A stretch of 64,000 bases of DNA, taken from positions 186,001-250,000 of the IMG/VR virus record IMGVR_UViG_3300044712_002668. One strand, 5' to 3'. The translations under genes were made by a program, and so were the position numbers. Positions 935 to 28,808 of this stretch are shown in pieces. Each line of letters opens with the position of its first letter. Positions within the stretch are counted from its first letter, which is position 1. Below the pieces are notes generated by a model. The model saw only the letters and a list, made by a program, of their open reading frames with translations. It was not told the origin of the DNA and did not search any database.

Positions 935-968
935 TAATTTGATATATAAGCGGAACGCGAGTTTAGAA

Positions 969-1037
969 TCACCATTAGTATAATGGCAGTACGGTACTCA
1001 TATGAGTACCAGTGCAGGTTCGAATCCTGTAGGTGAT
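969..1037 (+). pseudogene. degenerate tRNA-like gene (Met-CAT-like relic)
   Basis: D arm GTAT-AATGGCA-GTAC and T arm GCAGG-TTCGAAT-CCTGT are present; acceptor is one base short; anticodon arm is the palindrome GGTACTCATATGAGTACC with no 7-nt loop. Confidence 0.6.
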
Positions 1038-1076
1038 TTATACAAATTTCGTTCCGCTTATTTATTTAAGGGTTAA

Positions 1077-9370: not shown

Positions 9371-9862
9371 ATGCTTAGAAACTGTTTGTTTTGTGATGTA
9401 GAATTTAATGCTAATGAAAAAGAGGTTAGAAGAGGTAATGGAAAGTTTTGCACTCTTAGTTGTTCTAGCAAGTTTTATAGCAGGGAAAGATCTTTGAAGA
9501 AGATTCCAAATGTAGAATGTGCTCTATGCAAAAAAAAGTTTTATAAATCAAAATCAGATTTTGCTTTATCTAAAAGTGGTCTATTTTTCTGTTGCAGAAA
9601 ACATAAAGATCAAGCTCAAAGAATTGGTGGTATTCGTGCCATTATGCCAGATCACTATGGTACCAGTTTGAAAAAATACAGACAGTTAGCTTTATCTGTA
9701 AAAGACACAAAATGTGAACGATGTGGATATGAACAAAATCCAGCGGCAATAGTTATTCATCATATTGATAAAAATAGAGATAACAATTCTATCGATAATC
9801 TTGAAGTTTTATGTTCTAATTGTCATGCTATAGAGCATTGGGATAGAGCTTGTGGAGAATAG
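9371..9862 (+). CDS. HNH homing endonuclease with N-terminal Cys-rich zinc-binding repeats
   Basis: CERC...IHHIDKNRDNNSIDNLEVLCSNCHAIEH; GAGGAGG RBS; opposite orientation to flanking tRNAs. Confidence 0.9.
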   Translation: MLRNCLFCDVEFNANEKEVRRGNGKFCTLSCSSKFYSRERSLKKIPNVECALCKKKFYKSKSDFALSKSGLFFCCRKHKDQAQRIGGIRAIMPDHYGTSLKKYRQLALSVKDTKCERCGYEQNPAAIVIHHIDKNRDNNSIDNLEVLCSNCHAIEHWDRACGE

Positions 9863-9924
9863 GGGTAACGCTCCCCTTTATCTGCATTGCAAATGCAGCG
9901 TAATACCTTGTATACTAATTCCCC
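9853..9924 (-). tRNA. tRNA-Ala(TGC)
   Basis: GGGGAAT/ATTCTCC (G3:U70), CTGCA-TTTGCAA-TGCAG; atypical T loop AGCGTTA. Confidence 0.88.
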
Positions 9925-11958: not shown

Positions 11959-12293
11959 TCTATTTTTATGTATGGAGTTCCAAAAAACCAGATATTTCCA
12001 TCAGTTTGATGTTCTTCTGTAGAGCGTTCATTAATTCTTTTTTGAAAAGAACACTCATATCCATATGAATTTAATTCTTTTTTCAATTCTCCGTATACTA
12101 TCTGTGTTTCTTCTAATGTTTTATATTGTAGTAATTCGTGTCTATAACATGAATTTCCACTCAAAGCTTCTTTGTATATCTTATAAGCTATTATATTGAG
12201 AATATTATGTATAGCATATTGGAGTGGACTTTCAGATGATTTTCTATTTTTTGATTCATTAGTTATGTCACGAATTAATCCAGTACTAAGCAT
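11952..12293 (-). CDS. hypothetical protein
   Basis: 113-aa ORF, GAGG RBS. Confidence 0.55.
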   Translation of the reverse strand: MLSTGLIRDITNESKNRKSSESPLQYAIHNILNIIAYKIYKEALSGNSCYRHELLQYKTLEETQIVYGELKKELNSYGYECSFQKRINERSTEEHQTDGNIWFFGTPYIKIEW

Positions 12294-12308
12294 AATATCC
12301 TCATTTAG

Positions 12309-12345
12309 TATCCCAAGTAGGATTTGAACCTACAACCTCAGCTTT
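12309..12345 (-). pseudogene. 3' half (positions 37-73) of a split tRNA-Arg-like gene
   Basis: AA-AGCTG-AGGTT-GTAGG-TTCAAAT-CCTAC-TTGGGAT-A pairs with the 5' half at 12961-12995. Confidence 0.85.
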
Positions 12346-12356
12346 GATTTTGGTTG

Positions 12357-12430
12357 TACGCCTAGTAGGGCTCGAACCTACAACCATTGCGTTAGGACCG
12401 CAATACTCTATCCAATTGAGCTATAGGCGT
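12357..12430 (-). tRNA. tRNA-Arg(CCT)
   Basis: ACGCCTA/TAGGCGT acceptor, TTGCG-GTCCTAA-CGCAA, A20. Confidence 0.88.
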
Positions 12431-12431
12431 A

Positions 12432-12941
12432 TTATATTTGATCTAGTTTTATTAAACCATGATCTAATTCCCAATGACAGTTTCTACAAAGCGGAATTTG
12501 ATTTGATGGATCATTTACCGTTTCCAATAATGTGTTGTCAGGATATTCGTGTAATGGTATTTTATGTGCTAATTCAACATGAATAGAATATCCGCATTTT
12601 TTACATGGCATCTTTGTCATGTTTTTATTCCAGTAACGGTTCAAAGACCTGATCTCGTGATGTAACCAAGATGTATGCCTTCCTTTCTTTTTCTCTTTTT
12701 CTCTAAGTTCTCCGATTGTTTTTTGTTTTGTTGAATATTTTTCACGGCACGTTGCACATGTTTTTGCCCTAACAAAAAGTTCTTTACCACAATGTGTACA
12801 AAAACCTCTTGACTTTTTTAATCTTTTCGGAAACAGTTTGTTATTGTATCGTGCTGCGCAAGATTTTGAACAAAAAACAGGGTTATTTGTTGTTGTATCG
12901 CACTGTTTACACTTTATCAATATCTCATCTGATAATGCCAT
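12432..12941 (-). CDS. HNH homing endonuclease
   Basis: FCSKSCAA zinc repeat; CKKC...ELAHKIP...NQIPLCRNCHWELD. Confidence 0.88.
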   Translation of the reverse strand: MALSDEILIKCKQCDTTTNNPVFCSKSCAARYNNKLFPKRLKKSRGFCTHCGKELFVRAKTCATCREKYSTKQKTIGELREKEKKKGRHTSWLHHEIRSLNRYWNKNMTKMPCKKCGYSIHVELAHKIPLHEYPDNTLLETVNDPSNQIPLCRNCHWELDHGLIKLDQI

Positions 12942-12960
12942 TGCTAGGTCTCTGTTTGTG

Positions 12961-12995
12961 GGAAAGCTGCACTCTATCCGTTGAGTTATTGGGAC
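12961..12995 (-). pseudogene. 5' half (positions 1-35) of a split tRNA-Arg-like gene
   Basis: GTCCCAA-TA-ACTC-AACGGATA-GAGT-G-CAGCT-TT-CC. Confidence 0.85.
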
Positions 12996-13023
12996 ATGAT
13001 TCCCTTTCTATTACCGTTTGTGG

Positions 13024-13155
13024 TCAAGCAGCAATAGAAAGGGAATCATTTTTCCAAGCGTTGTTTCTTGGACGATCTTTTCTTCCTTTTCCTTTTTCAG
13101 GTTTTACCGTTCTATCCCTCAGCCTTGAAGGATCATTCTCCTGAAAGTAGGTCAT
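13024..13155 (-). CDS. ArfA-like small basic protein (not in the supplied ORF track)
   Basis: MTYFQENDPSRLRDRTVKPEKGKGRKDRPRNNAWKNDSLSIAA resembles the ArfA core FRQRVEKNKKGKGSY.RK. Confidence 0.5.
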   Translation of the reverse strand: MTYFQENDPSRLRDRTVKPEKGKGRKDRPRNNAWKNDSLSIAA

Positions 13156-13162
13156 GATTTTG

Positions 13163-13381
13163 TTACGTTTTTTTGTCATTGTTCTTTTCCTCCATATCTA
13201 AAACTTCCCAGTAAGCCTCATCAGTATCCCAATATTTACATTCTTTTACGGTATCAAATAAAGCCGCTTTCTTAATTGTTTTTCCTTCTGGATGTACCCA
13301 TCCATGATACTCATACCTCCAACCATAATGCACAAGCATTGATACTTTATATGCATCCATAAACCCCATTACATTTATCAT
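13163..13381 (-). CDS. hypothetical protein
   Basis: 72-aa ORF overlapping the AAA stop. Confidence 0.55.
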   Translation of the reverse strand: MINVMGFMDAYKVSMLVHYGWRYEYHGWVHPEGKTIKKAALFDTVKECKYWDTDEAYWEVLDMEEKNNDKKT

Positions 13382-16219: not shown

Positions 16220-16369
16220 AAGCAACGAAAATGGTGAGACCCTACATGCCTTTCGGCTCCGTCGTGTCTGCCAATTTCACCATACCTCTCTTGCGAGAGA
16301 TAGCGGGACTCGAACCCGCACATCTTTTGGATAACAGTTTTGCAGATGAAAGATCTCAGTCGCGTTGTT
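16220..16369 (-). ncRNA. scaffold RNA copy 1 carrying a circularly permuted class-II tRNA(GCA)
   Basis: P1-GCG-P2-UUUCA|UC scaffold; cargo 16259-16346 is 3' half, GCAA loop, then 5' half. Confidence 0.8.
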
Positions 16370-16774: not shown

Positions 16775-18055
16775 CTATTCGTCATCCCAGATGCTATCCG
16801 TCTTGTCCTCTGCCATCGCCCCCATCGACTCCAATTTTACCTCTATCTCAAAAAATGTTGATAACCACTTCTTAAAACTAAGAAATGTTGATGTAACATT
16901 TTCTGTTTTATGTGGTCCTAGTAAAAATTCAGTTATTTCTGGTGTTCCAAAAACTTTCCATAATCCATTATCTGATAAAAATTTCTTTGGAACAACATAA
17001 TCTGAATATGTAAAATTACAAGATAATTTATCTATATGAGTAAACCCTAAAGAAAAATCAGGATCTATTTTACTATTATCTTTAATTATGTTAGAAGCTC
17101 TAAGGGCGTAAAACATAAGCTGTAGATCAAAGTAACCAGTTCTAAGTTTACCCTGCCAAGTACCAGTTACATTATGATCGTCAGAATAAATATGATCTAG
17201 TTTATCTGACTCTGTAGGAAAAGGCCCAGGTCCATGTCTTGTGGGATAAACCCTCAACAAGCCTAATTTCTTAATAGGATCATCATAGTTAGCTTCTTCT
17301 AACAAGGAATAAACGTTATTGAATGTGGTATCAGTCCAAGTATTATATGGAGTGAAACCTACATTCTCATCAAGAAGAACTCCTTGAGCACCTTCAAATA
17401 GAATATTTTCTTGCTGATGTTCAAATACATGTCTTAGATATGCCGAATCAGTTATGTGTAATCCTGACTCAATAAACTGCTGACATCTTTCAATAAAATA
17501 ATCTATCTCTTCTTCAGTACAGCAAATGTCAAAATTGTTTTTTACAATTTCATTTTGAATTCTTACTTTATTGAGTAGAATATTTTTAGTTTGTAAATCT
17601 TTTACTCTTAAAGAGAGATCTGGATAATCTATATTATACTTTACAGTTTCACCGATACCCATACCACAAGAACCATGGCGTTGATTACCACGATCTTGTT
17701 CTCTTTTTTTATTCAGTAGAATATGTACTGGAGTTGTTACTAAAGCTTCCCTATCTACAGATAAACGAAATAGAGGATTGTAAGGTAGGTCTGTTGCTTC
17801 ATTGAGAAGCGCCCCAGGATTTACAATCATATATTTTGACAAGTGTGTAAATACACTAGGCAAAAATGAACCAGCACCAAATTGTGCAAAGGTATGGTGT
17901 TGATCTTTAGTAACTACATTATGAGCGGCTTGTGCGCCGCCATTATATCTTATAACATGTTTTATGTCATATTTTCTGCACAAATAATCTGTAACAGAGC
18001 CTTTGCCCTCATCACCGAAACCAAGCCCGGCAACAGCAATTACTTTTCTGTTCAT
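16775..18055 (-). CDS. purA: adenylosuccinate synthetase
   Basis: GLGFGDEGKG P-loop, RYNGGAQAAH, EGAQG, TRHGPGPFP. Confidence 0.9.
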   Translation of the reverse strand: MNRKVIAVAGLGFGDEGKGSVTDYLCRKYDIKHVIRYNGGAQAAHNVVTKDQHHTFAQFGAGSFLPSVFTHLSKYMIVNPGALLNEATDLPYNPLFRLSVDREALVTTPVHILLNKKREQDRGNQRHGSCGMGIGETVKYNIDYPDLSLRVKDLQTKNILLNKVRIQNEIVKNNFDICCTEEEIDYFIERCQQFIESGLHITDSAYLRHVFEHQQENILFEGAQGVLLDENVGFTPYNTWTDTTFNNVYSLLEEANYDDPIKKLGLLRVYPTRHGPGPFPTESDKLDHIYSDDHNVTGTWQGKLRTGYFDLQLMFYALRASNIIKDNSKIDPDFSLGFTHIDKLSCNFTYSDYVVPKKFLSDNGLWKVFGTPEITEFLLGPHKTENVTSTFLSFKKWLSTFFEIEVKLESMGAMAEDKTDSIWDDE

Positions 18056-18058
18056 TAG

Positions 18059-18130
18059 AGACTCAGGTAGGGATTGAACCTACGACCAGCGACTTAACAG
18101 GCCACCGCTCTACCACTGAGCTACTGAGTC
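18059..18130 (-). tRNA. tRNA-Asn(GTT)
   Basis: GACTCAG/CTGAGTC, GTGGC-CTGTTAA-GTCGC. Confidence 0.9.
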
Positions 18131-18136
18131 AATGAG

Positions 18137-18206
18137 TCGGCTTGTCAGGATTTCCACCTGAATCGCCCTGTACAATCAGGGGCTTTGAGAATTAAGCTAC
18201 AAGCCG
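18137..18206 (-). pseudogene. tRNA-Pro-like gene with aberrant 6-nt anticodon loop
   Basis: CGGCTTG/CAAGCCG-A73 (Pro identity); anticodon arm CCCTG-ATTGTA-CAGGG. Confidence 0.6.
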
Positions 18207-18237
18207 TTTTTATTCAGGTGTTACTAAAGATACCTTT

Positions 18238-19179
18238 TCATGTACCAGTAGAAACACCAGAAGCTTTTGATTTGGCCAGAGCATCAAGAGCGCCAGTTAC
18301 AACACTAATGGCATCCTTTGATACACCGGACTCTTCCAAATCTTTTGCCATATCTCCAGCAGTTCCCTCAATCAAAGCGATTGATAAACCAATGGATTCG
18401 CAAACAAGACTTGGATCTTGTAGCATGATAACGTTCTCACCACCAAGAAGATCTACCCATGTCTTTTTTAGAACAGGATCTGAGTAGTGGCTTGTACCAG
18501 AAGGGATGACAAAGAAGATGTGATACTTCTTTTGAGCCTCAGCAATGACATCCTTGATTGGCAAATCTTGCGGAACATCATCACCAAATAGACGGGCAAT
18601 CTCTGCTTTTGTACATTTCGGATATGGCTTTTCATCGCCAATCAAAAACAGATAACCTTTTTTATTTCGCTTTTCAAGGCAATCAATGGAAGTGTGATGA
18701 GCCATGAAGTAAATGGCGTTTTGATAGCTCTCTTCATACGAGCCACCTCCACCACCTTCAAGCCACATATTTGTAAGATCATTATCCATCTCAATTCCAG
18801 ATTCAAACTGTCCAATCTGGATTGACCCATGATCTGAATAATAATCCCCTACAGCACCAAATAGTACCTGAGGATCTTTAATGTATCCTCTTTGTAAAAG
18901 AAGTTCCATAAGCTTGGGAAGCTTCTTTTGCATTTGATGAGGAACCCTATGCATGGATCCTGTTACATCAAAAATTACAGCAATTGCGGTAGATTCAGGA
19001 TGAGCTTCAGAATCACGGCTTTCGCGATTCTTTCCAAATGGATTCAAAGACTCATGTACTTTGGCTGCTGTTTGACCGGATCTGATTTTATCAGAATATT
19101 CAAACGCATCCACACCACGGCGAGAACGGTCTGCTGTTCTACTGACGTAGTGATCATCACTCCAACTGGAACTTCCCAT
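18238..19179 (-). CDS. von Willebrand factor A domain protein
   Basis: MIDAS-like FDVTGSM; GGGGSYEESY; LFLIGDE. Confidence 0.85.
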   Translation of the reverse strand: MGSSSWSDDHYVSRTADRSRRGVDAFEYSDKIRSGQTAAKVHESLNPFGKNRESRDSEAHPESTAIAVIFDVTGSMHRVPHQMQKKLPKLMELLLQRGYIKDPQVLFGAVGDYYSDHGSIQIGQFESGIEMDNDLTNMWLEGGGGGSYEESYQNAIYFMAHHTSIDCLEKRNKKGYLFLIGDEKPYPKCTKAEIARLFGDDVPQDLPIKDVIAEAQKKYHIFFVIPSGTSHYSDPVLKKTWVDLLGGENVIMLQDPSLVCESIGLSIALIEGTAGDMAKDLEESGVSKDAISVVTGALDALAKSKASGVSTGT

Positions 19180-19196
19180 TGTATCAGCCTTCTTTC

Positions 19197-19643
19197 TTAT
19201 GTAACTTTGAAATTAGATTTTTCTCTACCCATTTCAAAGAATCTTGGAACCATATACCAATCATTAGGATCAAACCCGGCTTTATCATCAATCAAGATTG
19301 AGAAGTACGGTTTTAGATCAAAACAACCAGTTTTTGTGTTTTGAATGGGTGTTTTGTTTACTGCTTTAAACTCAACACCAAGTTCCTTTAGCTTATCAAG
19401 ATATTTTGAATAATCTTGTTCATAACAAGATGTCCAAAGAACCAGATAAACCTCAGGCAGTTTTGACAGCTTTTTCAATGCATCTATAGCATGGGGAAAA
19501 AACTTTACTACATCACTTGTGTAGTTTGAATCTGCTATCGTATCATGAACATCTACTAAAACATAAATAGTGTTCCATTCTCTTTGGACCGCTGTTTTAT
19601 ATGCTTTGGTAATGGATTGTAGTAGACTCATTTTACTTGGCAC
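19197..19643 (-). CDS. HAD-like phosphatase
   Basis: VDVHDTI, LWTS, and KPYFSILIDDKAGF; true start is probably the internal MSLLQ. Confidence 0.65.
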   Translation of the reverse strand: MPSKMSLLQSITKAYKTAVQREWNTIYVLVDVHDTIADSNYTSDVVKFFPHAIDALKKLSKLPEVYLVLWTSCYEQDYSKYLDKLKELGVEFKAVNKTPIQNTKTGCFDLKPYFSILIDDKAGFDPNDWYMVPRFFEMGREKSNFKVT

Positions 19644-19713
19644 CCCCGGTAGGATTCGAACCTACGATGGGAAGATTAGAAATCTTCTGCCTTATCCACT
19701 AGGCAACGGAGGC
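19638..19713 (-). tRNA. tRNA-Arg(TCT)
   Basis: GAAGA-TTTCTAA-TCTTC, encoded CCA. Confidence 0.9.
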
Positions 19714-20046
19714 GTAATGTCTCAGTCTGTGACAGTTAGAGCATAAAAGCACACATTTGTCAAGCTCTTCCTTAATCTGTTTCGCAGATTTTAATCTTAA
19801 TTTAGTCCATTCAACATCTTTATCAGTTAGATGATGAAAATCATATACAGAATAGTGATATTCATTATTACAATCAAAACATTTTCCACCCATCATTTGT
19901 ATAGCTTGTATTTTTCTATTAATCCACCTTTGTATACAATACTTGTTAAAACAATCTTTGCATTTAGATGCTGGTACACCAGGTTTTCTTTCGTAAAAAT
20001 CGGATATTTTTTTGTCAGTTTTACATGTAGGACATTTCTTGATCAT
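19699..20046 (-). CDS. HNH homing endonuclease
   Basis: CPTC/CKDC, CFDC...YDFHH...CVLLCSNCHRLRH; last five codons lie inside tRNA-Arg(TCT). Confidence 0.85.
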   Translation of the reverse strand: MIKKCPTCKTDKKISDFYERKPGVPASKCKDCFNKYCIQRWINRKIQAIQMMGGKCFDCNNEYHYSVYDFHHLTDKDVEWTKLRLKSAKQIKEELDKCVLLCSNCHRLRHYASVA

Positions 20047-20067
20047 ATCCTATTGCAAGGATATGCA

Positions 20068-20104
20068 TAGAAAGATAATTTCTATCCGGCTGAGCTATGG
20101 AGGC
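20068..20104 (-). pseudogene. 5' half remnant of tRNA-Arg(TCT)
   Basis: GCCTCCA-TA-GCTC-AGCCGGATA-GAAA-TTATC-TT-TCT-A, ending just after the anticodon. Confidence 0.7.
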
Positions 20105-20110
20105 ATAGTT

Positions 20111-20500
20111 TTAAATTATCAGACTACCTTTGGGTTCTTTTGGCATTTCTTTTTCTACAGAAAGACCAGAACGTTCGGCACGATTTTTAAGCATGATGTC
20201 ATGAAATTCTGCAAGCATGCGTTCATAACGCATCCCCTTATCATTCATGTCTTTAAAATACCTTATATTATCAATGACAGCAAAAATAGTTACGGGACCA
20301 TCTTCGGCATCCACAGGGACAATATGAGTTTTATAACTCAACCCCAGTCCATTCGGAGTTGGAATCATAATCATATCAGAACGGATTTCAAAACAATTTT
20401 CAAGTTTTACCGGGTTGGTAATTGGTAGCGAAATATTAAGATCCTCACCGATCTCACAAATCAATTTACGACAACCAGAACATACAATTGCTTTTTCCAT
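20111..20500 (-). CDS. hypothetical protein
   Basis: 129-aa ORF with CSGC. Confidence 0.55.
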   Translation of the reverse strand: MEKAIVCSGCRKLICEIGEDLNISLPITNPVKLENCFEIRSDMIMIPTPNGLGLSYKTHIVPVDAEDGPVTIFAVIDNIRYFKDMNDKGMRYERMLAEFHDIMLKNRAERSGLSVEKEMPKEPKGSLII

Positions 20501-20502
20501 TA

Positions 20503-21321
20503 TTATTCCTTGAATTCTTTTGGCAAGATATCTACAAAACGTTTTAGATCAAAGTTCTTTGGATCTGAAACCTGACCATCACCTATTTCAATGATACGGA
20601 ATTTTCCGTCAGTTCTTCTCGCTATATCAACAGAGAAAAAACCGTTTGCAAAACCAATTTTATGTACACATTCTGTAAGTATCTCTGGTATGGTATACGG
20701 ATTTGTAGCATGTTTGGGAGAGAATTTCTCCGTATTTGAATATGCTATACCTTTTACTACAAAGAATCTTTGTTCAGAGTTTGTAAGATAATCTTCACCA
20801 TGTCTTACACATACCCCACCCTCAATGCATCCTCGATATTTTTTGATTGCTAAAACAACTTCTTGAATATCATCTTTGGATTTTACCAAAGAACCCGGTG
20901 ACATTGAGTTGGATTTTACAAAATCTTTTATAAAGTAACTAGGCCACTTTAAATTGGCCAAAGCTTCTTTGAAGTTTGCGTTTTCATCTAGTATGATGGT
21001 TTCAGCAGTAAGATGTGCAATCTTCGGATACCAGAATGGTAGGTGATGACAGAATCTATATGACTCTGTAGTAGTAAAAAGCTTGGCTCCGTATTTCTTT
21101 ATTTCATATTCAAGAATTTGATACTCATCGATATTGAGCATCCAGCCACGATATAGCACAGTATCGCCAGCTTTGATCGCTGGCTTGATAGAGATCTGTT
21201 GTCCGATAGTTATAACAGAGGCTTCGTAGCCGTTAGACTGTATAGTATCGAACTCTTCTCGCCAAACACAATCTGGCAAAAAGTCTTTTACTGGATCTGC
21301 TGGATAGAGTATTCGTAACAT
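20503..21321 (-). CDS. ATP-grasp domain protein (R2K-like)
   Basis: FIKDFVKS, EQRFFVV, FFSVDIA, IIEIGDGQVSD. Confidence 0.8.
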   Translation of the reverse strand: MLRILYPADPVKDFLPDCVWREEFDTIQSNGYEASVITIGQQISIKPAIKAGDTVLYRGWMLNIDEYQILEYEIKKYGAKLFTTTESYRFCHHLPFWYPKIAHLTAETIILDENANFKEALANLKWPSYFIKDFVKSNSMSPGSLVKSKDDIQEVVLAIKKYRGCIEGGVCVRHGEDYLTNSEQRFFVVKGIAYSNTEKFSPKHATNPYTIPEILTECVHKIGFANGFFSVDIARRTDGKFRIIEIGDGQVSDPKNFDLKRFVDILPKEFKE

Positions 21322-21328
21322 AAATCAG

Positions 21329-21415
21329 CGGAGAATGAGGGAGTCGAACCCCCGGTAGAGTTTCCCCTACGTCGGTTTTCAAAACCGATGCCATAAACCA
21401 CTCGGCCAATTCTCC
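21329..21415 (-). tRNA. tRNA-Ser(TGA)
   Basis: TCGGT-TTTGAAA-ACCGA, long variable arm, G73. Confidence 0.92.
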
Positions 21416-21428
21416 ATATACAATATAG

Positions 21429-21502
21429 TGGGCTCACTCGGGTTCGAACCGAGAACATCCCGGTTATGAGCCGGGGGCTCTGACCGATTGAGCTATGAGC
21501 CC
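21429..21502 (-). tRNA. tRNA-Ile2/Met(CAT)
   Basis: GGGCTCA/TGAGCCC, CCCGG-CTCATAA-CCGGG; body looks Ile2-like. Confidence 0.85.
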
Positions 21503-21512
21503 AGATGCAGTC

Positions 21513-22535
21513 CTATAGACCAACTCGCGCCCCCAGGTATAGACCGAAGTTGCCACCTGTGTCAACCGAAACTGCTGGGCCAAGGTGTAAATTGCGCATA
21601 CCGGGTAGGTGATGACCTACATTGTAGTTTACTGGAGCAAACACAAAACCAACAGTCTGTCTCTGGGTAGCGTATCCTACTCCGACATCCAGAAAAGTCC
21701 AGTCAGGATCGGTCTTGGTTTTTCCGTAAGATAAAAAAGAAACCATAATTCCTGGAAGTACTTCTCCCTTAATATCTTTTCCAGATGTTGTTATTCCTGA
21801 ATCTACGCTCAAGTAGATACGTGGATCTAGTCTGAAACTAGATGATGGAACTTCTTGCTTTAGTGTAGATTTAATAGGAATTGTTTCAGTTTTACCATTA
21901 GCTGTAATTGAGAATTTAGAATAAGCATAATGTCTTCCTTCTTCATCTTGTCCAAGTACAGTAGTTACATCATATTTTCTTGGATAAATTTTTAATGACC
22001 AAGGATCTTTATCAGCCCCTGTGAACTTGACGGTTCCTAGTGGTATTTTTTGTTTATCAAAATTTTCGTCAAAATTCAAAATTAAAGTTCTGGTAAGATA
22101 ATTATATTTGTCAGGGTTTGGGCAGGTTACAGATGTTCCATCGGGACATTTTACTTTATCTGGAACAATAGGTTTTTCATTATTTGGGTTGAGAGCTTGA
22201 CTTCCAGAAGATGGAATGTGTTCTTGATCCTGTCCAATTGATTCGGCATCTATTGTCAAAAGATCATCTACACTTGCCCCCATCTTGGCAAGATCTTTTT
22301 TTATAGCATCTAGATTGACATCCCTCTCTTTTATCATTCTTTCTAGATCAGATTTGTTTACATAGGAGCCCTGGGCTCGCATCAGGTTGTTACCAAGGTT
22401 TTTGGCTTCAACTACTGATGTTTCTATTGTTTTTAATTTCTGTATTGTATCATATTGAATTTTTATTATAAAAGCTAATATTGATAATATTAAAGCTATA
22501 ATTGCGCCGATAATAGTTTTGGTTTTCCAGTCCAT
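21513..22535 (-). CDS. membrane-anchored hypothetical protein with beta-strand-rich C-terminus
   Basis: N-terminal TM segment (IIGAIIALILSILAFII), coiled coil, amphipathic beta strands at the end. Confidence 0.6.
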   Translation of the reverse strand: MDWKTKTIIGAIIALILSILAFIIKIQYDTIQKLKTIETSVVEAKNLGNNLMRAQGSYVNKSDLERMIKERDVNLDAIKKDLAKMGASVDDLLTIDAESIGQDQEHIPSSGSQALNPNNEKPIVPDKVKCPDGTSVTCPNPDKYNYLTRTLILNFDENFDKQKIPLGTVKFTGADKDPWSLKIYPRKYDVTTVLGQDEEGRHYAYSKFSITANGKTETIPIKSTLKQEVPSSSFRLDPRIYLSVDSGITTSGKDIKGEVLPGIMVSFLSYGKTKTDPDWTFLDVGVGYATQRQTVGFVFAPVNYNVGHHLPGMRNLHLGPAVSVDTGGNFGLYLGARVGL

Positions 22536-26130: not shown

Positions 26131-26308
26131 GGGGCTGCTCTACCGTTGAGCTACTCAACCTGTATTCAAACATTTCTTCGAACGGCACCTTCGCAAAGTG
26201 ATATCCCTTTGCACTCCAGGCTTTAGCTTACGCTTAACGTTGAGAGGAAATTGCCTTCCCAGGACTGTCATACATGTTGATACTGGATTCGAACCAGTGA
26301 CCAACCCC
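26131..26308 (-). ncRNA. circularly permuted tRNA-like gene without scaffold
   Basis: 3' half 26275-26308 precedes 5' half 26131-26160; GTTGA/TCAAC and GCCCC/GGGGT pair across the halves. Confidence 0.65.
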
Positions 26309-26852: not shown

Positions 26853-27060
26853 AAAACAACGAAAAGGGCTCAGACGAAGTTTTTCCAGCATCCGGCCACC
26901 GCAAAAAGCATATTTTAGTTTCGGTTATGTTTCCGAACTCATCTCATCTCTGTCATTCCTGAATAGAAATCGGGGATGAGTACCGCGCGGCGTAAGGGAG
27001 TCGAACCCTCATCGTTTGATTCGTAGTTCAAGATGAATCGTCCAAAAATCGCGTTGTTTT
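26853..27060 (-). ncRNA. scaffold RNA copy 4 carrying a permuted tRNA-Arg(ACG)-like cargo
   Basis: AACAAC-GCG...GACGA-UUCAUC; CU-ACG-AA loop, T arm, ACGCCGC, linker, GCGGUG. Confidence 0.75.
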
Positions 27061-28652: not shown

Positions 28653-28808
28653 AGATAACGAAAAATTGAAAAACCCTTTTTTACGCGCTCTGACCAACTG
28701 AGCTATCTGCCTATTTTGGGTTCAATTAAGAACCTTGTAGGCAGAATTGGATTCGAACCAATGACATCGTCCTTATAATGGATGAAAGATTTTTCTACCG
28801 CGTTATCT
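28653..28808 (-). ncRNA. scaffold RNA copy 10 carrying a circularly permuted tRNA-Ile(UAU)
   Basis: cargo 28684-28782; joining CG|UCC restores CGUCC/GGACG. Confidence 0.82.

What the first reader, a model, noticed from the sequence alone, without database searches (positions are those of the whole stretch)
19638..20104. Second HNH plus replacement-tRNA cassette at tRNA-Arg(TCT)
Seen: a decayed 5' half of tRNA-Arg(TCT) (20104-20068) stops one base after the anticodon. It is followed by an HNH gene whose last codons (ASVA-stop) are the first 15 nt of an intact, different tRNA-Arg(TCT). No old 3' half is visible. Inference: the same strategy as at 12.3-13.0 kb, with the same break region and matching isoacceptor. 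The overlap physically locks nuclease and tRNA together.
Basis: partly seen in the sequence, partly recalled or inferred. Interest (0 to 1): 0.72.

Follow-up and report, generated by a model that had tools for sequence, protein, structure and literature searches.

The report
HNH nuclease with spare tRNA-Arg gene
In this giant phage a selfish HNH nuclease gene sits between the dead front half of one arginine-tRNA gene and a working, re-coded copy, one case of a widespread but apparently undescribed nuclease-plus-rescue-tRNA module of phages.

Summary
The layout is real. Reading the minus strand: a tRNA-like 5' piece (20104-20067), a 115-aa HNH endonuclease gene (20046-19699), and an intact tRNA-Arg(TCT) (19713-19638) that shares 15 nt with the end of the HNH gene. 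No 3' half of the old tRNA is present.

Positions 1-23 are a perfect acceptor strand plus D-arm. The "anticodon" part is a palindrome, TAGAA-N7-TTCTA, which lies upstream of homologous HNH genes in many phages.

Comparisons support the cassette idea at family level:
- 40 of 80 viral contigs with a homologue have tRNA-Arg(TCT) within 150 nt.
- Many of them show an old tRNA-Arg split around positions 23-35 by HNH plus a new tRNA.
- Coliphage LAMP has the intact empty site where Bas92 has the split one (its HNH is 58% identical to ours).
- Old pieces keep the canonical D-arm (10 of 11). HNH-linked intact tRNAs have a re-coded D-stem (31 of 34).

For this phage itself no HNH-free near relative was found, so insertion between two pre-existing tandem tRNAs is not excluded. 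Cleavage specificity is inferred, not shown. I rate it a new variant of a known kind (free-standing homing endonucleases in tRNA clusters).

The parts
20081..20104 (-). 5' piece of an old, canonical-type tRNA-Arg gene: acceptor 5' strand (GCCTCCA), U8 A9, D-stem 5' strand GCTC, and a D-loop with G18 G19 A20
   Evidence: Exact match to TAGCTCAGNNGGATAGA. BLAST matches to 5' ends of annotated tRNAs. Begins 6 nt after the stop of ORF129, where the relative L004 has an intact tRNA-Arg(TCT) 8 nt after the orthologous stop.
20067..20085 (-). It starts 38 nt before the HNH start codon.
   Evidence: TAGAA-N7-TTCTA (up to 1 mismatch) lies 20-130 nt upstream of the HNH start in 29 of 67 unique homologous loci, against 19 hits in the remaining ~170 kb.
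20044..20065 (-). Second hairpin, CATATCCT / AGGATATG, that encloses the AGGA and the ATG of the HNH gene
   Evidence: It is part of the minimum-free-energy fold, -18 kcal/mol, z -1.9. Hairpins that sequester the start region are described for T4 homing endonucleases (PMC2988022).
19699..20046 (-). HNH endonuclease gene, 115 aa, with an N-terminal CxxC...CxxC zinc ribbon and a C-terminal HNH motif
   Evidence: PHROG 2255, E 4e-26. All invariant Cys and His columns of 34 homologues are present. AF2 model pLDDT 94.6. Foldseek top hits are HNH nucleases but weak, E 0.3 or worse.
19699..19713 (-). 15-nt overlap: the last five HNH codons and the stop are nt 1-15 of the tRNA
   Evidence: Read directly from the sequence. 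Homologues align only to residue ~110, so the tail is read-through into the tRNA.
19638..19713 (-). Intact tRNA-Arg(TCT) with a re-coded but paired D-stem (GCCT/AGGC instead of GCTC/GAGC). It is the only tRNA-Arg(TCT) in the genome.
   Evidence: ARAGORN. Rfam 60 bits. 84% identical to the L004 A-type tRNA and 75% to the L078 HNH-linked tRNA.
20111..20500 (-). Upstream flank, ORF129 (no known family); the anchor for orthology of the site
   Evidence: 41% identical over the full length to L004:1645-2034 and 50% to P0040.
19197..19631 (-). Downstream flank, a 144-aa gene that starts 6 nt after the tRNA
   Evidence: PHROG 1238, E 2e-13. Homologues occur in other huge-phage contigs, but not next to tRNA-Arg.

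Best explanation
The locus is a free-standing HNH homing-endonuclease gene lodged in a tRNA-Arg(UCU) gene of a giant phage's tRNA array.

Shown:
- The nuclease belongs to a clade that, across many unrelated phages, sits beside tRNA-Arg(TCT) genes.
- In those phages a resident tRNA-Arg with the canonical D-arm (GCTCA..GGATAGAGC) is found split between the D-arm and the anticodon loop.
- An intact tRNA-Arg(TCT) with a D-stem re-coded by compensatory changes lies next to the nuclease.
- Here the old gene survives only as its first ~23 nt, fused to a palindrome that belongs to the HNH upstream region.
- The re-coded tRNA (GCCT/AGGC) follows the nuclease and overlaps its stop.

Inferred:
- The nuclease cuts canonical tRNA-Arg(UCU) genes of nuclease-free relatives during co-infection, in or near the D-stem 3' strand and anticodon-stem 5' strand.
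- Recombinational repair copies the nuclease together with the uncuttable tRNA. The phage, in which AGA is 42% of arginine codons, keeps its tRNA while the element spreads: cleave and rescue.
- RNase P processing at the tRNA 5' end would remove the last five codons and the stop from the HNH mRNA.
- The hairpin over the start codon would further limit expression.
For: - HNH identity and an intact motif.
- Anatomy of the locus.
- Clade-wide link to tRNA-Arg(TCT): 40 of 80 IMG/VR loci within 150 nt, in four layouts. 36 of 66 distinct proteins; the label clusters on the tree, with a separate tRNA-Val(TAC) clade.
- Split old tRNAs flanking [new tRNA + HNH]: of 68 unique loci, 11 have 5' pieces, 26 have 3' hits (some of them complete rewired tRNA-like genes) and 9 have both. 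Checked by eye in L026, L057 and L088.
- Natural empty and occupied sites: LAMP has an intact tRNA-Arg(TCT). Bas92 has the same gene split after GGATAG by an HNH (58% identical to ours) plus a different tRNA-Arg(TCT).
- D-arm contrast: old 10 of 11 canonical, new 31 of 34 non-canonical, p 9e-7.
- Control: of 88 phage loci with a canonical tRNA-Arg(TCT), only 2 have such an HNH within 300 nt.
- The orthologous site in L004 has an intact tRNA and no remnant.
- L078 has the same layout as ours: remnant, palindrome, HNH, overlapping tRNA.
- AGA usage.
- T4 precedent for a stop-codon/tRNA-Arg overlap and processing: PMC2330249.
Against: - No cleavage data exist for any member of this clade.
- No HNH-free near relative of this phage was found. 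L009-L011 are 100% identical, and read data are too thin to use.
- The intact tRNA is of a type native to the lineage: 84% identical to the L004 A-type at the same locus. It need not have arrived with the nuclease.
- The remnant is not detected by any general tRNA tool.
- The TCT is one base out of register.
- The old 3' half is missing here, unlike in many family members.
- The palindrome is found in only 29 of 67 loci.
Confidence: 0.6

Rival explanations
1. The nuclease gene inserted on its own into the first of two pre-existing tandem tRNA-Arg(UCU) genes and deleted its 3' half. The intact tRNA is an old resident, not a passenger, so there is no 'replacement cassette' at this locus.
For: The relative L004 has two tandem intact tRNA-Arg(TCT) genes right after the ORF129 orthologue and no HNH. 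Its A-type copy is the closest known relative of our intact tRNA, at 84%. No old 3' half remains here.
Against: In L004 the A-type comes first and the canonical-like B-type second, the reverse of our order. In the family, tRNA and HNH are repeatedly found together between the two halves of one old gene. L078 shares the whole layout although its HNH is only 43% identical.
Confidence: 0.22
2. The nuclease acts mainly as a driver of local rearrangement and duplication of tRNA genes, as SegB does in T6. It is not a site-specific homing element. The 5' piece would be a scar of nuclease-induced segmental duplication or deletion in the array.
For: SegB cuts inside tRNA genes and drives amplification of tRNA loci (PMC13096335). 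The window is littered with orphan tRNA pieces. It holds three different HNH genes that abut tRNAs.
Against: The remnant has a different D-arm from the intact copy, so it is not a recent duplicate of it. The clade's isoacceptor specificity and the D-arm contrast point to a defined target.
Confidence: 0.12
3. The 5' piece is not derived from a tRNA gene; the resemblance is chance or convergent.
For: ARAGORN, Rfam and nhmmer profiles do not report it.
Against: A 15-base specified D-arm motif matches exactly, with 0.12 expected at up to 2 mismatches. It is on the strand of the array, 6 nt after ORF129, where the relative has a tRNA. Homologous loci have clear old pieces in the same place.
Confidence: 0.03
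4. It is an intron-containing tRNA gene: a group I intron with an HNH ORF in the anticodon loop.
For: Group I introns sit in the anticodon loops of some bacterial tRNA genes (established knowledge).
Against: No intron family hit at E up to 10 in 19400-20300 or 12100-13200. There is no 3' exon here. The space between the pieces is filled by the ORF and a complete tRNA, which leaves no room for a ribozyme core.
Confidence: 0.01

Closest known systems
T4/T6 SegB, a GIY-YIG free-standing homing endonuclease in the tRNA cluster
   Same: It is a free-standing nuclease gene inside a phage tRNA array, next to tRNA-Arg. [quoted passage not shown] It cuts inside tRNA genes and promotes inheritance or amplification of the tRNA region (PMC13096335; PMC2988022).
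   Different: The nuclease fold is different (GIY-YIG versus HNH). SegB recognises a T-loop-like motif shared by many tRNAs. No split resident tRNA and no re-coded isoacceptor partner has been described for it.
T5 F-TflI/II/IV and other HNH genes in phage tRNA clusters (Felix O1, mycobacteriophages)
   Same: These are HNH ORFs scattered within tRNA clusters (PMC2330249; PMC3185647; PMC6409571). Felix O1 p088 is a 45% identical homologue of ours.
   Different: The papers I could search note the co-location only. None describes an isoacceptor-specific link, split old tRNAs, re-coded D-stems or the upstream palindrome.
Collaborative or intronless homing with an immune allele (T4 mobE, segG), and synthetic 'cleave and rescue' gene drives
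   Same: The logic is the same: cut the sensitive allele, then copy the nuclease together with a flanking resistant version of the needed gene (from memory, not tested here).
   Different: Here the rescue is a complete second gene for a tRNA, and the damaged resident gene is left behind as halves. It is not a converted flank of the same gene.
I-TevI autorepression through an operator that mimics its homing site
   Same: A partial copy of the presumed target (TAGA..TCTA of the D-arm and anticodon loop) sits at a fixed distance upstream of the nuclease gene.
   Different: Binding has not been tested. The comparison is a lead recalled from memory.

Membership tests
HNH (beta-beta-alpha-metal) endonucleases | His-Asn-His catalytic motif with zinc-binding cysteines | tested here: met
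   FHH at 70-72 and CSNCHRLRH at 102-110 are present, and all invariant Cys and His columns of 34 homologues are kept. PHROG 2255, E 4e-26.
HNH (beta-beta-alpha-metal) endonucleases | Recognised by curated Pfam or NCBIfam HNH models, or by fold | tested here: inconclusive
   No Pfam or NCBIfam HNH hit at threshold. PDB sequence search gives only McrA at E 0.27. Foldseek top hits are Cas9 HNH, T4 endonuclease VII, Cap5 and Gme HNH, but at E 0.3-1.
Free-standing homing endonuclease genes | Not inside an intron or intein | tested here: met
   No intron model hit. The ORF is separate from its neighbours.
Free-standing homing endonuclease genes | Present or absent among otherwise collinear relatives | tested here: met
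   LAMP and Bas94 lack it and Bas92 has it at one locus. L004 lacks it after the ORF129 orthologue. No near relative of this phage itself was found.
Free-standing homing endonuclease genes | Cuts the nuclease-free allele near the insertion point and is over-inherited in crosses | not testable with these tools
   Needs enzyme assays and phage crosses. The protein-DNA prediction was not run by the tool.
Group I intron in a tRNA anticodon loop | Ribozyme core and two exons that join into one tRNA | tested here: not met
   No intron family at E up to 10 and no 3' exon at this locus.
Integrase-type islands at tRNA genes | Integrase gene, and a duplicated 3' part of the tRNA as the attachment site | tested here: not met
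   No integrase in the flanks. The left-over piece is the 5' part, not the 3' part.
SegB-like GIY-YIG endonucleases | GIY-YIG catalytic domain | tested here: not met
   Family hits are to HNH only.

The most novel reading that the evidence does not exclude
This HNH clade is a natural, isoacceptor-specific 'cleave and rescue' drive. It recognises the D-stem/anticodon-stem region of canonical tRNA-Arg(UCU) genes. It carries a rescue tRNA made immune by compensatory D-stem changes or, in Felix O1, Bas93/94 and several metagenomic phages, by a rewired tRNA whose D-stem 3' strand and D-loop lie after the anticodon arm. It also keeps a non-cleavable palindromic mimic of its target upstream of its own gene as an operator.
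Probability: 0.35. Interest if true: 0.82.

Novelty: new variant of a known kind. Interest (0 to 1): 0.66.

Why it matters
Homing endonucleases in phage tRNA clusters are known, but how they coexist with genes the phage needs is not well understood.

If the module works as inferred, it has several consequences:
- It shows a selfish nuclease that destroys a resident tRNA gene and supplies a re-coded substitute.
- This would explain why phage tRNA arrays are full of tRNA fragments and oddly coded tRNAs.
- It would explain why tRNA-Arg(UCU) is so mobile among phages.
- It gives a natural counterpart to engineered cleave-and-rescue drives.

It is directly testable with culturable coliphages, because Bas92 carries the module and LAMP has the empty site. 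It also suggests that some unusual phage tRNA sequences are shaped by nuclease avoidance at the DNA level, not only by host anticodon nucleases.

Tried and rejected
- General detection of the remnant gave nothing, so its tRNA origin rests on the motif test, BLAST and context. Tried: Rfam on the region and on a 60-nt cut-out, nhmmer with a profile of all the genome's tRNA halves, and nhmmer with a tRNA-Arg(TCT) profile, genome-wide and local.
- Searches for near relatives found nothing useful. The flank DNA and proteins found nothing in INPHARED. The flank proteins found nothing in IMG/VR. An exact 24-mer of the remnant had no match in IMG/VR. An alignment of ORF129 found only the L004 contig.
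- The look-up of the identical 144-aa protein gave three contigs that are 100% identical to the window.
- Population variants: four metagenome runs were laid on 18000-22500. Coverage is 2-5x in short contigs. One run's contig stops exactly at 20109, but a hole proves nothing.
- The protein-DNA complex prediction for the palindrome was not folded by the tool. It is not evidence either way.
- Group I intron, integrase island and chance were considered and rejected (see the rival explanations and membership tests).
- Reading the remnant as an amber-suppressor half (CTA by strict numbering) was considered and dropped. The stretch is the conserved palindrome.
- The tree row for Felix O1 p088 was translated from a wrong start and should be ignored.

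Full report
**Setting.** The window is bases 186001-250000 of a 335,988-bp, 37.9% G+C virus record. It carries 36 tRNA genes, nearly all on the minus strand between 6.7 and 29 kb of the window. Three metagenome contigs, one of them 454,833 bp long, are 100% identical to the window over the locus. The DNA is found in rhizosphere, freshwater and wetland metagenomes.

**Anatomy of the locus, read on the minus strand.**
- ORF129 ends at 20111.
- Six bases later, 20104-20081 reads as a tRNA acceptor 5' strand, U8 A9 and a complete D-arm start.
- 20085-20067 is an inverted repeat, ATAGAA-N7-TTCTAT.
- 20065-20044 is a second hairpin that encloses AGGA and the ATG. It is in the minimum-energy fold, -18 kcal/mol, z -1.9.
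- The ORF 20046-19699 encodes 115 aa.
- Its last 15 nt are the first 15 nt of tRNA-Arg(TCT) at 19713-19638 (Rfam 60 bits).
- The next gene starts 6 nt after the tRNA.
- No 3' tRNA half follows.

**The nuclease.**
- The ORF matches PHROG 2255 (HNH endonuclease) at E 4e-26.
- It is 45-58% identical to annotated HNH endonucleases of coliphage Bas92 and Felix O1-like phages.
- It keeps every invariant Cys and His column of an alignment of 34 homologues.
- The AlphaFold model is confident, pLDDT 94.6.
- Its best structural matches are HNH nucleases (Cas9 HNH, T4 endonuclease VII, Cap5, Gme HNH), but only at E 0.3-1.
- Pfam, NCBIfam and PDB sequence searches do not reach threshold.
- Homologues align only to about residue 110, so the ASVA tail is read-through into the tRNA.

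**The 5' piece.**
- TAGCTCAGNNGGATAGA matches exactly at 20097-20081. Dinucleotide shuffles give 0.12 matches per window even at up to 2 mismatches.
- BLAST hits of 20106-20081 fall on the 5' ends of annotated phage tRNA genes.
- Beyond position 23 the piece departs from a tRNA. The D-stem 3' strand is GAAA, and the segment up to the TCT is AT-rich and one base short.
- No general tRNA detector reports the piece.
- Arg identity is suggested by A20 in GGATAGA (an arginine identity element, from established knowledge), by TCT, and by 6 of 7 acceptor bases shared with the intact neighbour.

**Relatives of this phage.**
- Only distant relatives exist in the collections.
- In L004 (a 218-kb IMG/VR contig) the ORF129 orthologue is 41% identical over the same length and has the same C-terminus.
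- It is followed, 8 nt after its stop, by two tandem intact tRNA-Arg(TCT) genes, with no HNH and no remnant.
- The first, the A-type, is 84% identical to our intact tRNA. The second has a near-canonical D-arm.
- In L017 the orthologue is followed directly by another gene.
- So a tRNA-Arg at this site is ancestral to at least part of the group, and the remnant goes with the HNH. The order of tRNA types differs between L004 and our phage, however.

**The nuclease clade across phages.** A profile of the homologues retrieved 80 IMG/VR loci.
- An intact tRNA-Arg(TCT) lies within 150 nt of the HNH in 40 of them.
- The layouts are downstream antisense (19), upstream sense (11), upstream antisense (7) and downstream sense as here (3).
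- On a tree of 66 distinct proteins the Arg label covers 36 rows and is clustered. A separate clade sits next to tRNA-Val(TAC).
- A tRNA-Arg(TCT) profile finds partial copies outside the called tRNAs. Of 68 unique loci, 11 have 5' pieces, 26 have 3' hits and 9 have both. Some of the 3' hits are complete rewired tRNA-like genes (see below), not remnants.
- The 5' pieces end at profile positions 23-34, and the 3' pieces mostly start at 25-37.
- Read by eye, L026, L057 and L088 show an old tRNA whose acceptor halves pair, interrupted by [new tRNA + HNH] or by the HNH alone.
- L078 has the same layout as the window: 5' piece, palindrome, HNH in sense, and a tRNA overlapping the ORF end by 9 nt.

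**A natural empty site.** In Kuravirus-like coliphages the locus between two conserved genes differs from phage to phage.
- LAMP holds one intact canonical tRNA-Arg(TCT).
- Bas92 holds that same gene split after GGATAG. Inserted are the HNH (58% identical to ours, in antisense) and a different tRNA-Arg(TCT). GGATAG is repeated at the far side, and positions 24-31 are replaced by an AT-rich stretch one base shorter.
- Bas93 holds the same old gene cut after position 27 by an unrelated HNH.

**Old versus new tRNAs.**
- Old 5' pieces have the canonical D-arm GCTCA..GGATAGAGC in 10 of 11 cases.
- Intact HNH-linked tRNAs lack it in 31 of 34 unique cases. They keep a paired D-stem through double changes such as GCTT/AAGC, GTTA/TAAC and GCAT/ATGC, or GCCT/AGGC in the window. 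Fisher p is 9e-7.
- As a control, of 88 IMG/VR loci with a canonical tRNA-Arg(TCT) and enough flank, only 2 have a hit to this HNH family within 300 nt. Those two hits cover only the C-terminal motif.
- This points to the D-stem 3' strand and the adjoining anticodon-stem 5' strand as the recognised region. It also points to the re-coded tRNAs as immune alleles. Both points are inference.

**The palindrome.**
- TAGAA-N7-TTCTA (up to 1 mismatch) lies 20-130 nt, mostly 33-54 nt, upstream of the HNH start in 29 of 67 unique loci. The remaining ~170 kb of those loci holds 19 hits.
- It keeps this position whichever way the HNH faces relative to the old tRNA.
- One arm coincides with the old D-arm (sense layouts, as here) or with the old anticodon loop (antisense layouts).
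- The stem sequence is conserved and the loop is not.
- It may be a disabled copy of the target kept as a binding site or an RNA hairpin. This is untested.

**Expression.** In T4 the segB ORF meets the 5' end of tRNA-Arg, and tRNA maturation cuts between its last and stop codons. This is read as a brake on nuclease synthesis (PMC2330249). Start-codon hairpins are usual for T4 homing endonucleases (PMC2988022). The same two features occur here. Because the family uses four HNH/tRNA layouts, the overlap is not what keeps nuclease and tRNA together.

**Why a rescue copy would be needed.** AGA makes up 42% and AGG 19% of arginine codons in 177 long ORFs. The genome has a single tRNA-Arg(TCT).

**The other cassettes.**
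- At 12.3-13.0 kb an unrelated HNH (Pfam HNH_2) and tRNA-Arg(CCT) lie between two halves of an old tRNA.
- Its acceptor and anticodon stems pair, and the joined halves fold as a tRNA. The old anticodon depends on where the joint is placed.
- A third HNH at 9371-9862 (+) overlaps, tail to tail, a tRNA-Ala(TGC) that ARAGORN missed.

**Literature.** In the searchable library, nucleases in tRNA clusters are described for T4/T6 SegB, T5, Felix O1, mycobacteriophages and cyanobacterial arrays. I found no description of an isoacceptor-specific HNH with a re-coded rescue tRNA and split resident genes. Absence from that library is not proof of novelty.

**Verdict.** For this locus it is the most likely reading (about 0.6). 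The main rival (about 0.2) is insertion between two pre-existing tRNA-Arg genes.

Noticed in passing
L001:2407-2485 (+), L024:846-924 (-), L023:846-924 (-), L098:1565-1639 (-), L081:1564-1638 (-), L092:1103-1178 (+), L030:1112-1188 (-), L033:1546-1627 (-): A family of tRNA-Arg(UCU)-like genes that ARAGORN does not call. The order of parts is: acceptor stem, UA, 4 nt, anticodon arm, spacer, 3-4 nt complementary to those 4 nt, a GUAAUGGA D-loop-like stretch, then the T arm. The long-range helix is 100% paired in 9 sequences, with changes on both sides in all 3 pairs (alignment A4). These genes sit beside HNH genes of this clade. In Bas94 one replaces the canonical tRNA-Arg.
   Followed up: partly
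window 12305-12997 (-): Cassette with both old halves: a 5' half near 12997-12960, an HNH of an unrelated family (12941-12432, Pfam HNH_2), tRNA-Arg(CCT) at 12430-12356, and a 3' half at 12344-12308. The old anticodon cannot be read.
   Followed up: partly
window 9371-9924: A third HNH gene (9371-9862, +; Pfam HNH and HNH_3) overlaps by 10 nt, tail to tail, a tRNA-Ala(TGC) at 9853-9924 (-). That tRNA scores 47.6 bits in Rfam but was missed by ARAGORN, and it has an unusual T-loop.
   Followed up: partly
window 16299-16325, 26133-26155, 26282-26303, 26987-27018, 28689-28705, 28738-28771 (all -): Orphan tRNA-like pieces (T-arm/acceptor or D-arm matches) lie outside the called tRNA genes. This suggests much turnover in the array.
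   Followed up: no
window 967-1039 (+) and 18136-18206 (-): ARAGORN calls two tRNAs with two-base anticodons (type undetermined).
   Followed up: no
L023:936-1385 (Bas93): A different, unrelated HNH gene cuts the same Kuravirus tRNA-Arg(TCT) after position 27. The same tRNA gene has therefore been invaded independently by two nuclease families.
   Followed up: partly
L106:1410-2902: In the relative with the HNH-free Arg site, a homologous HNH ORF (1992-1462, -) overlaps the 5' end of tRNA-Pro(TGG) by 21 nt. A second tRNA-Pro(TGG) lies 0.8 kb upstream.
   Followed up: no
L019:587-1111 (Pseudomonas phage SW_PA2862_14_24): tRNA-Arg(TCT) overlaps the start of the annotated HNH ORF. The ORF tail runs over what looks like the 3' two-thirds of a tRNA-Lys(TTT).
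   Followed up: no
window 20109: In one freshwater run that holds a ~99.5% identical strain, a 391-nt contig ends exactly at 20109, two bases below the ORF129 stop. Nothing from that run covers 19128-20108. This is compatible with a different allele, but coverage is only about 5x.
   Followed up: partly
whole record: The 336-kb record is classed as a provirus at 78% completeness. An identical stretch lies in a 454,833-bp metagenome contig. The record may be a cut from a larger contig.
   Followed up: no
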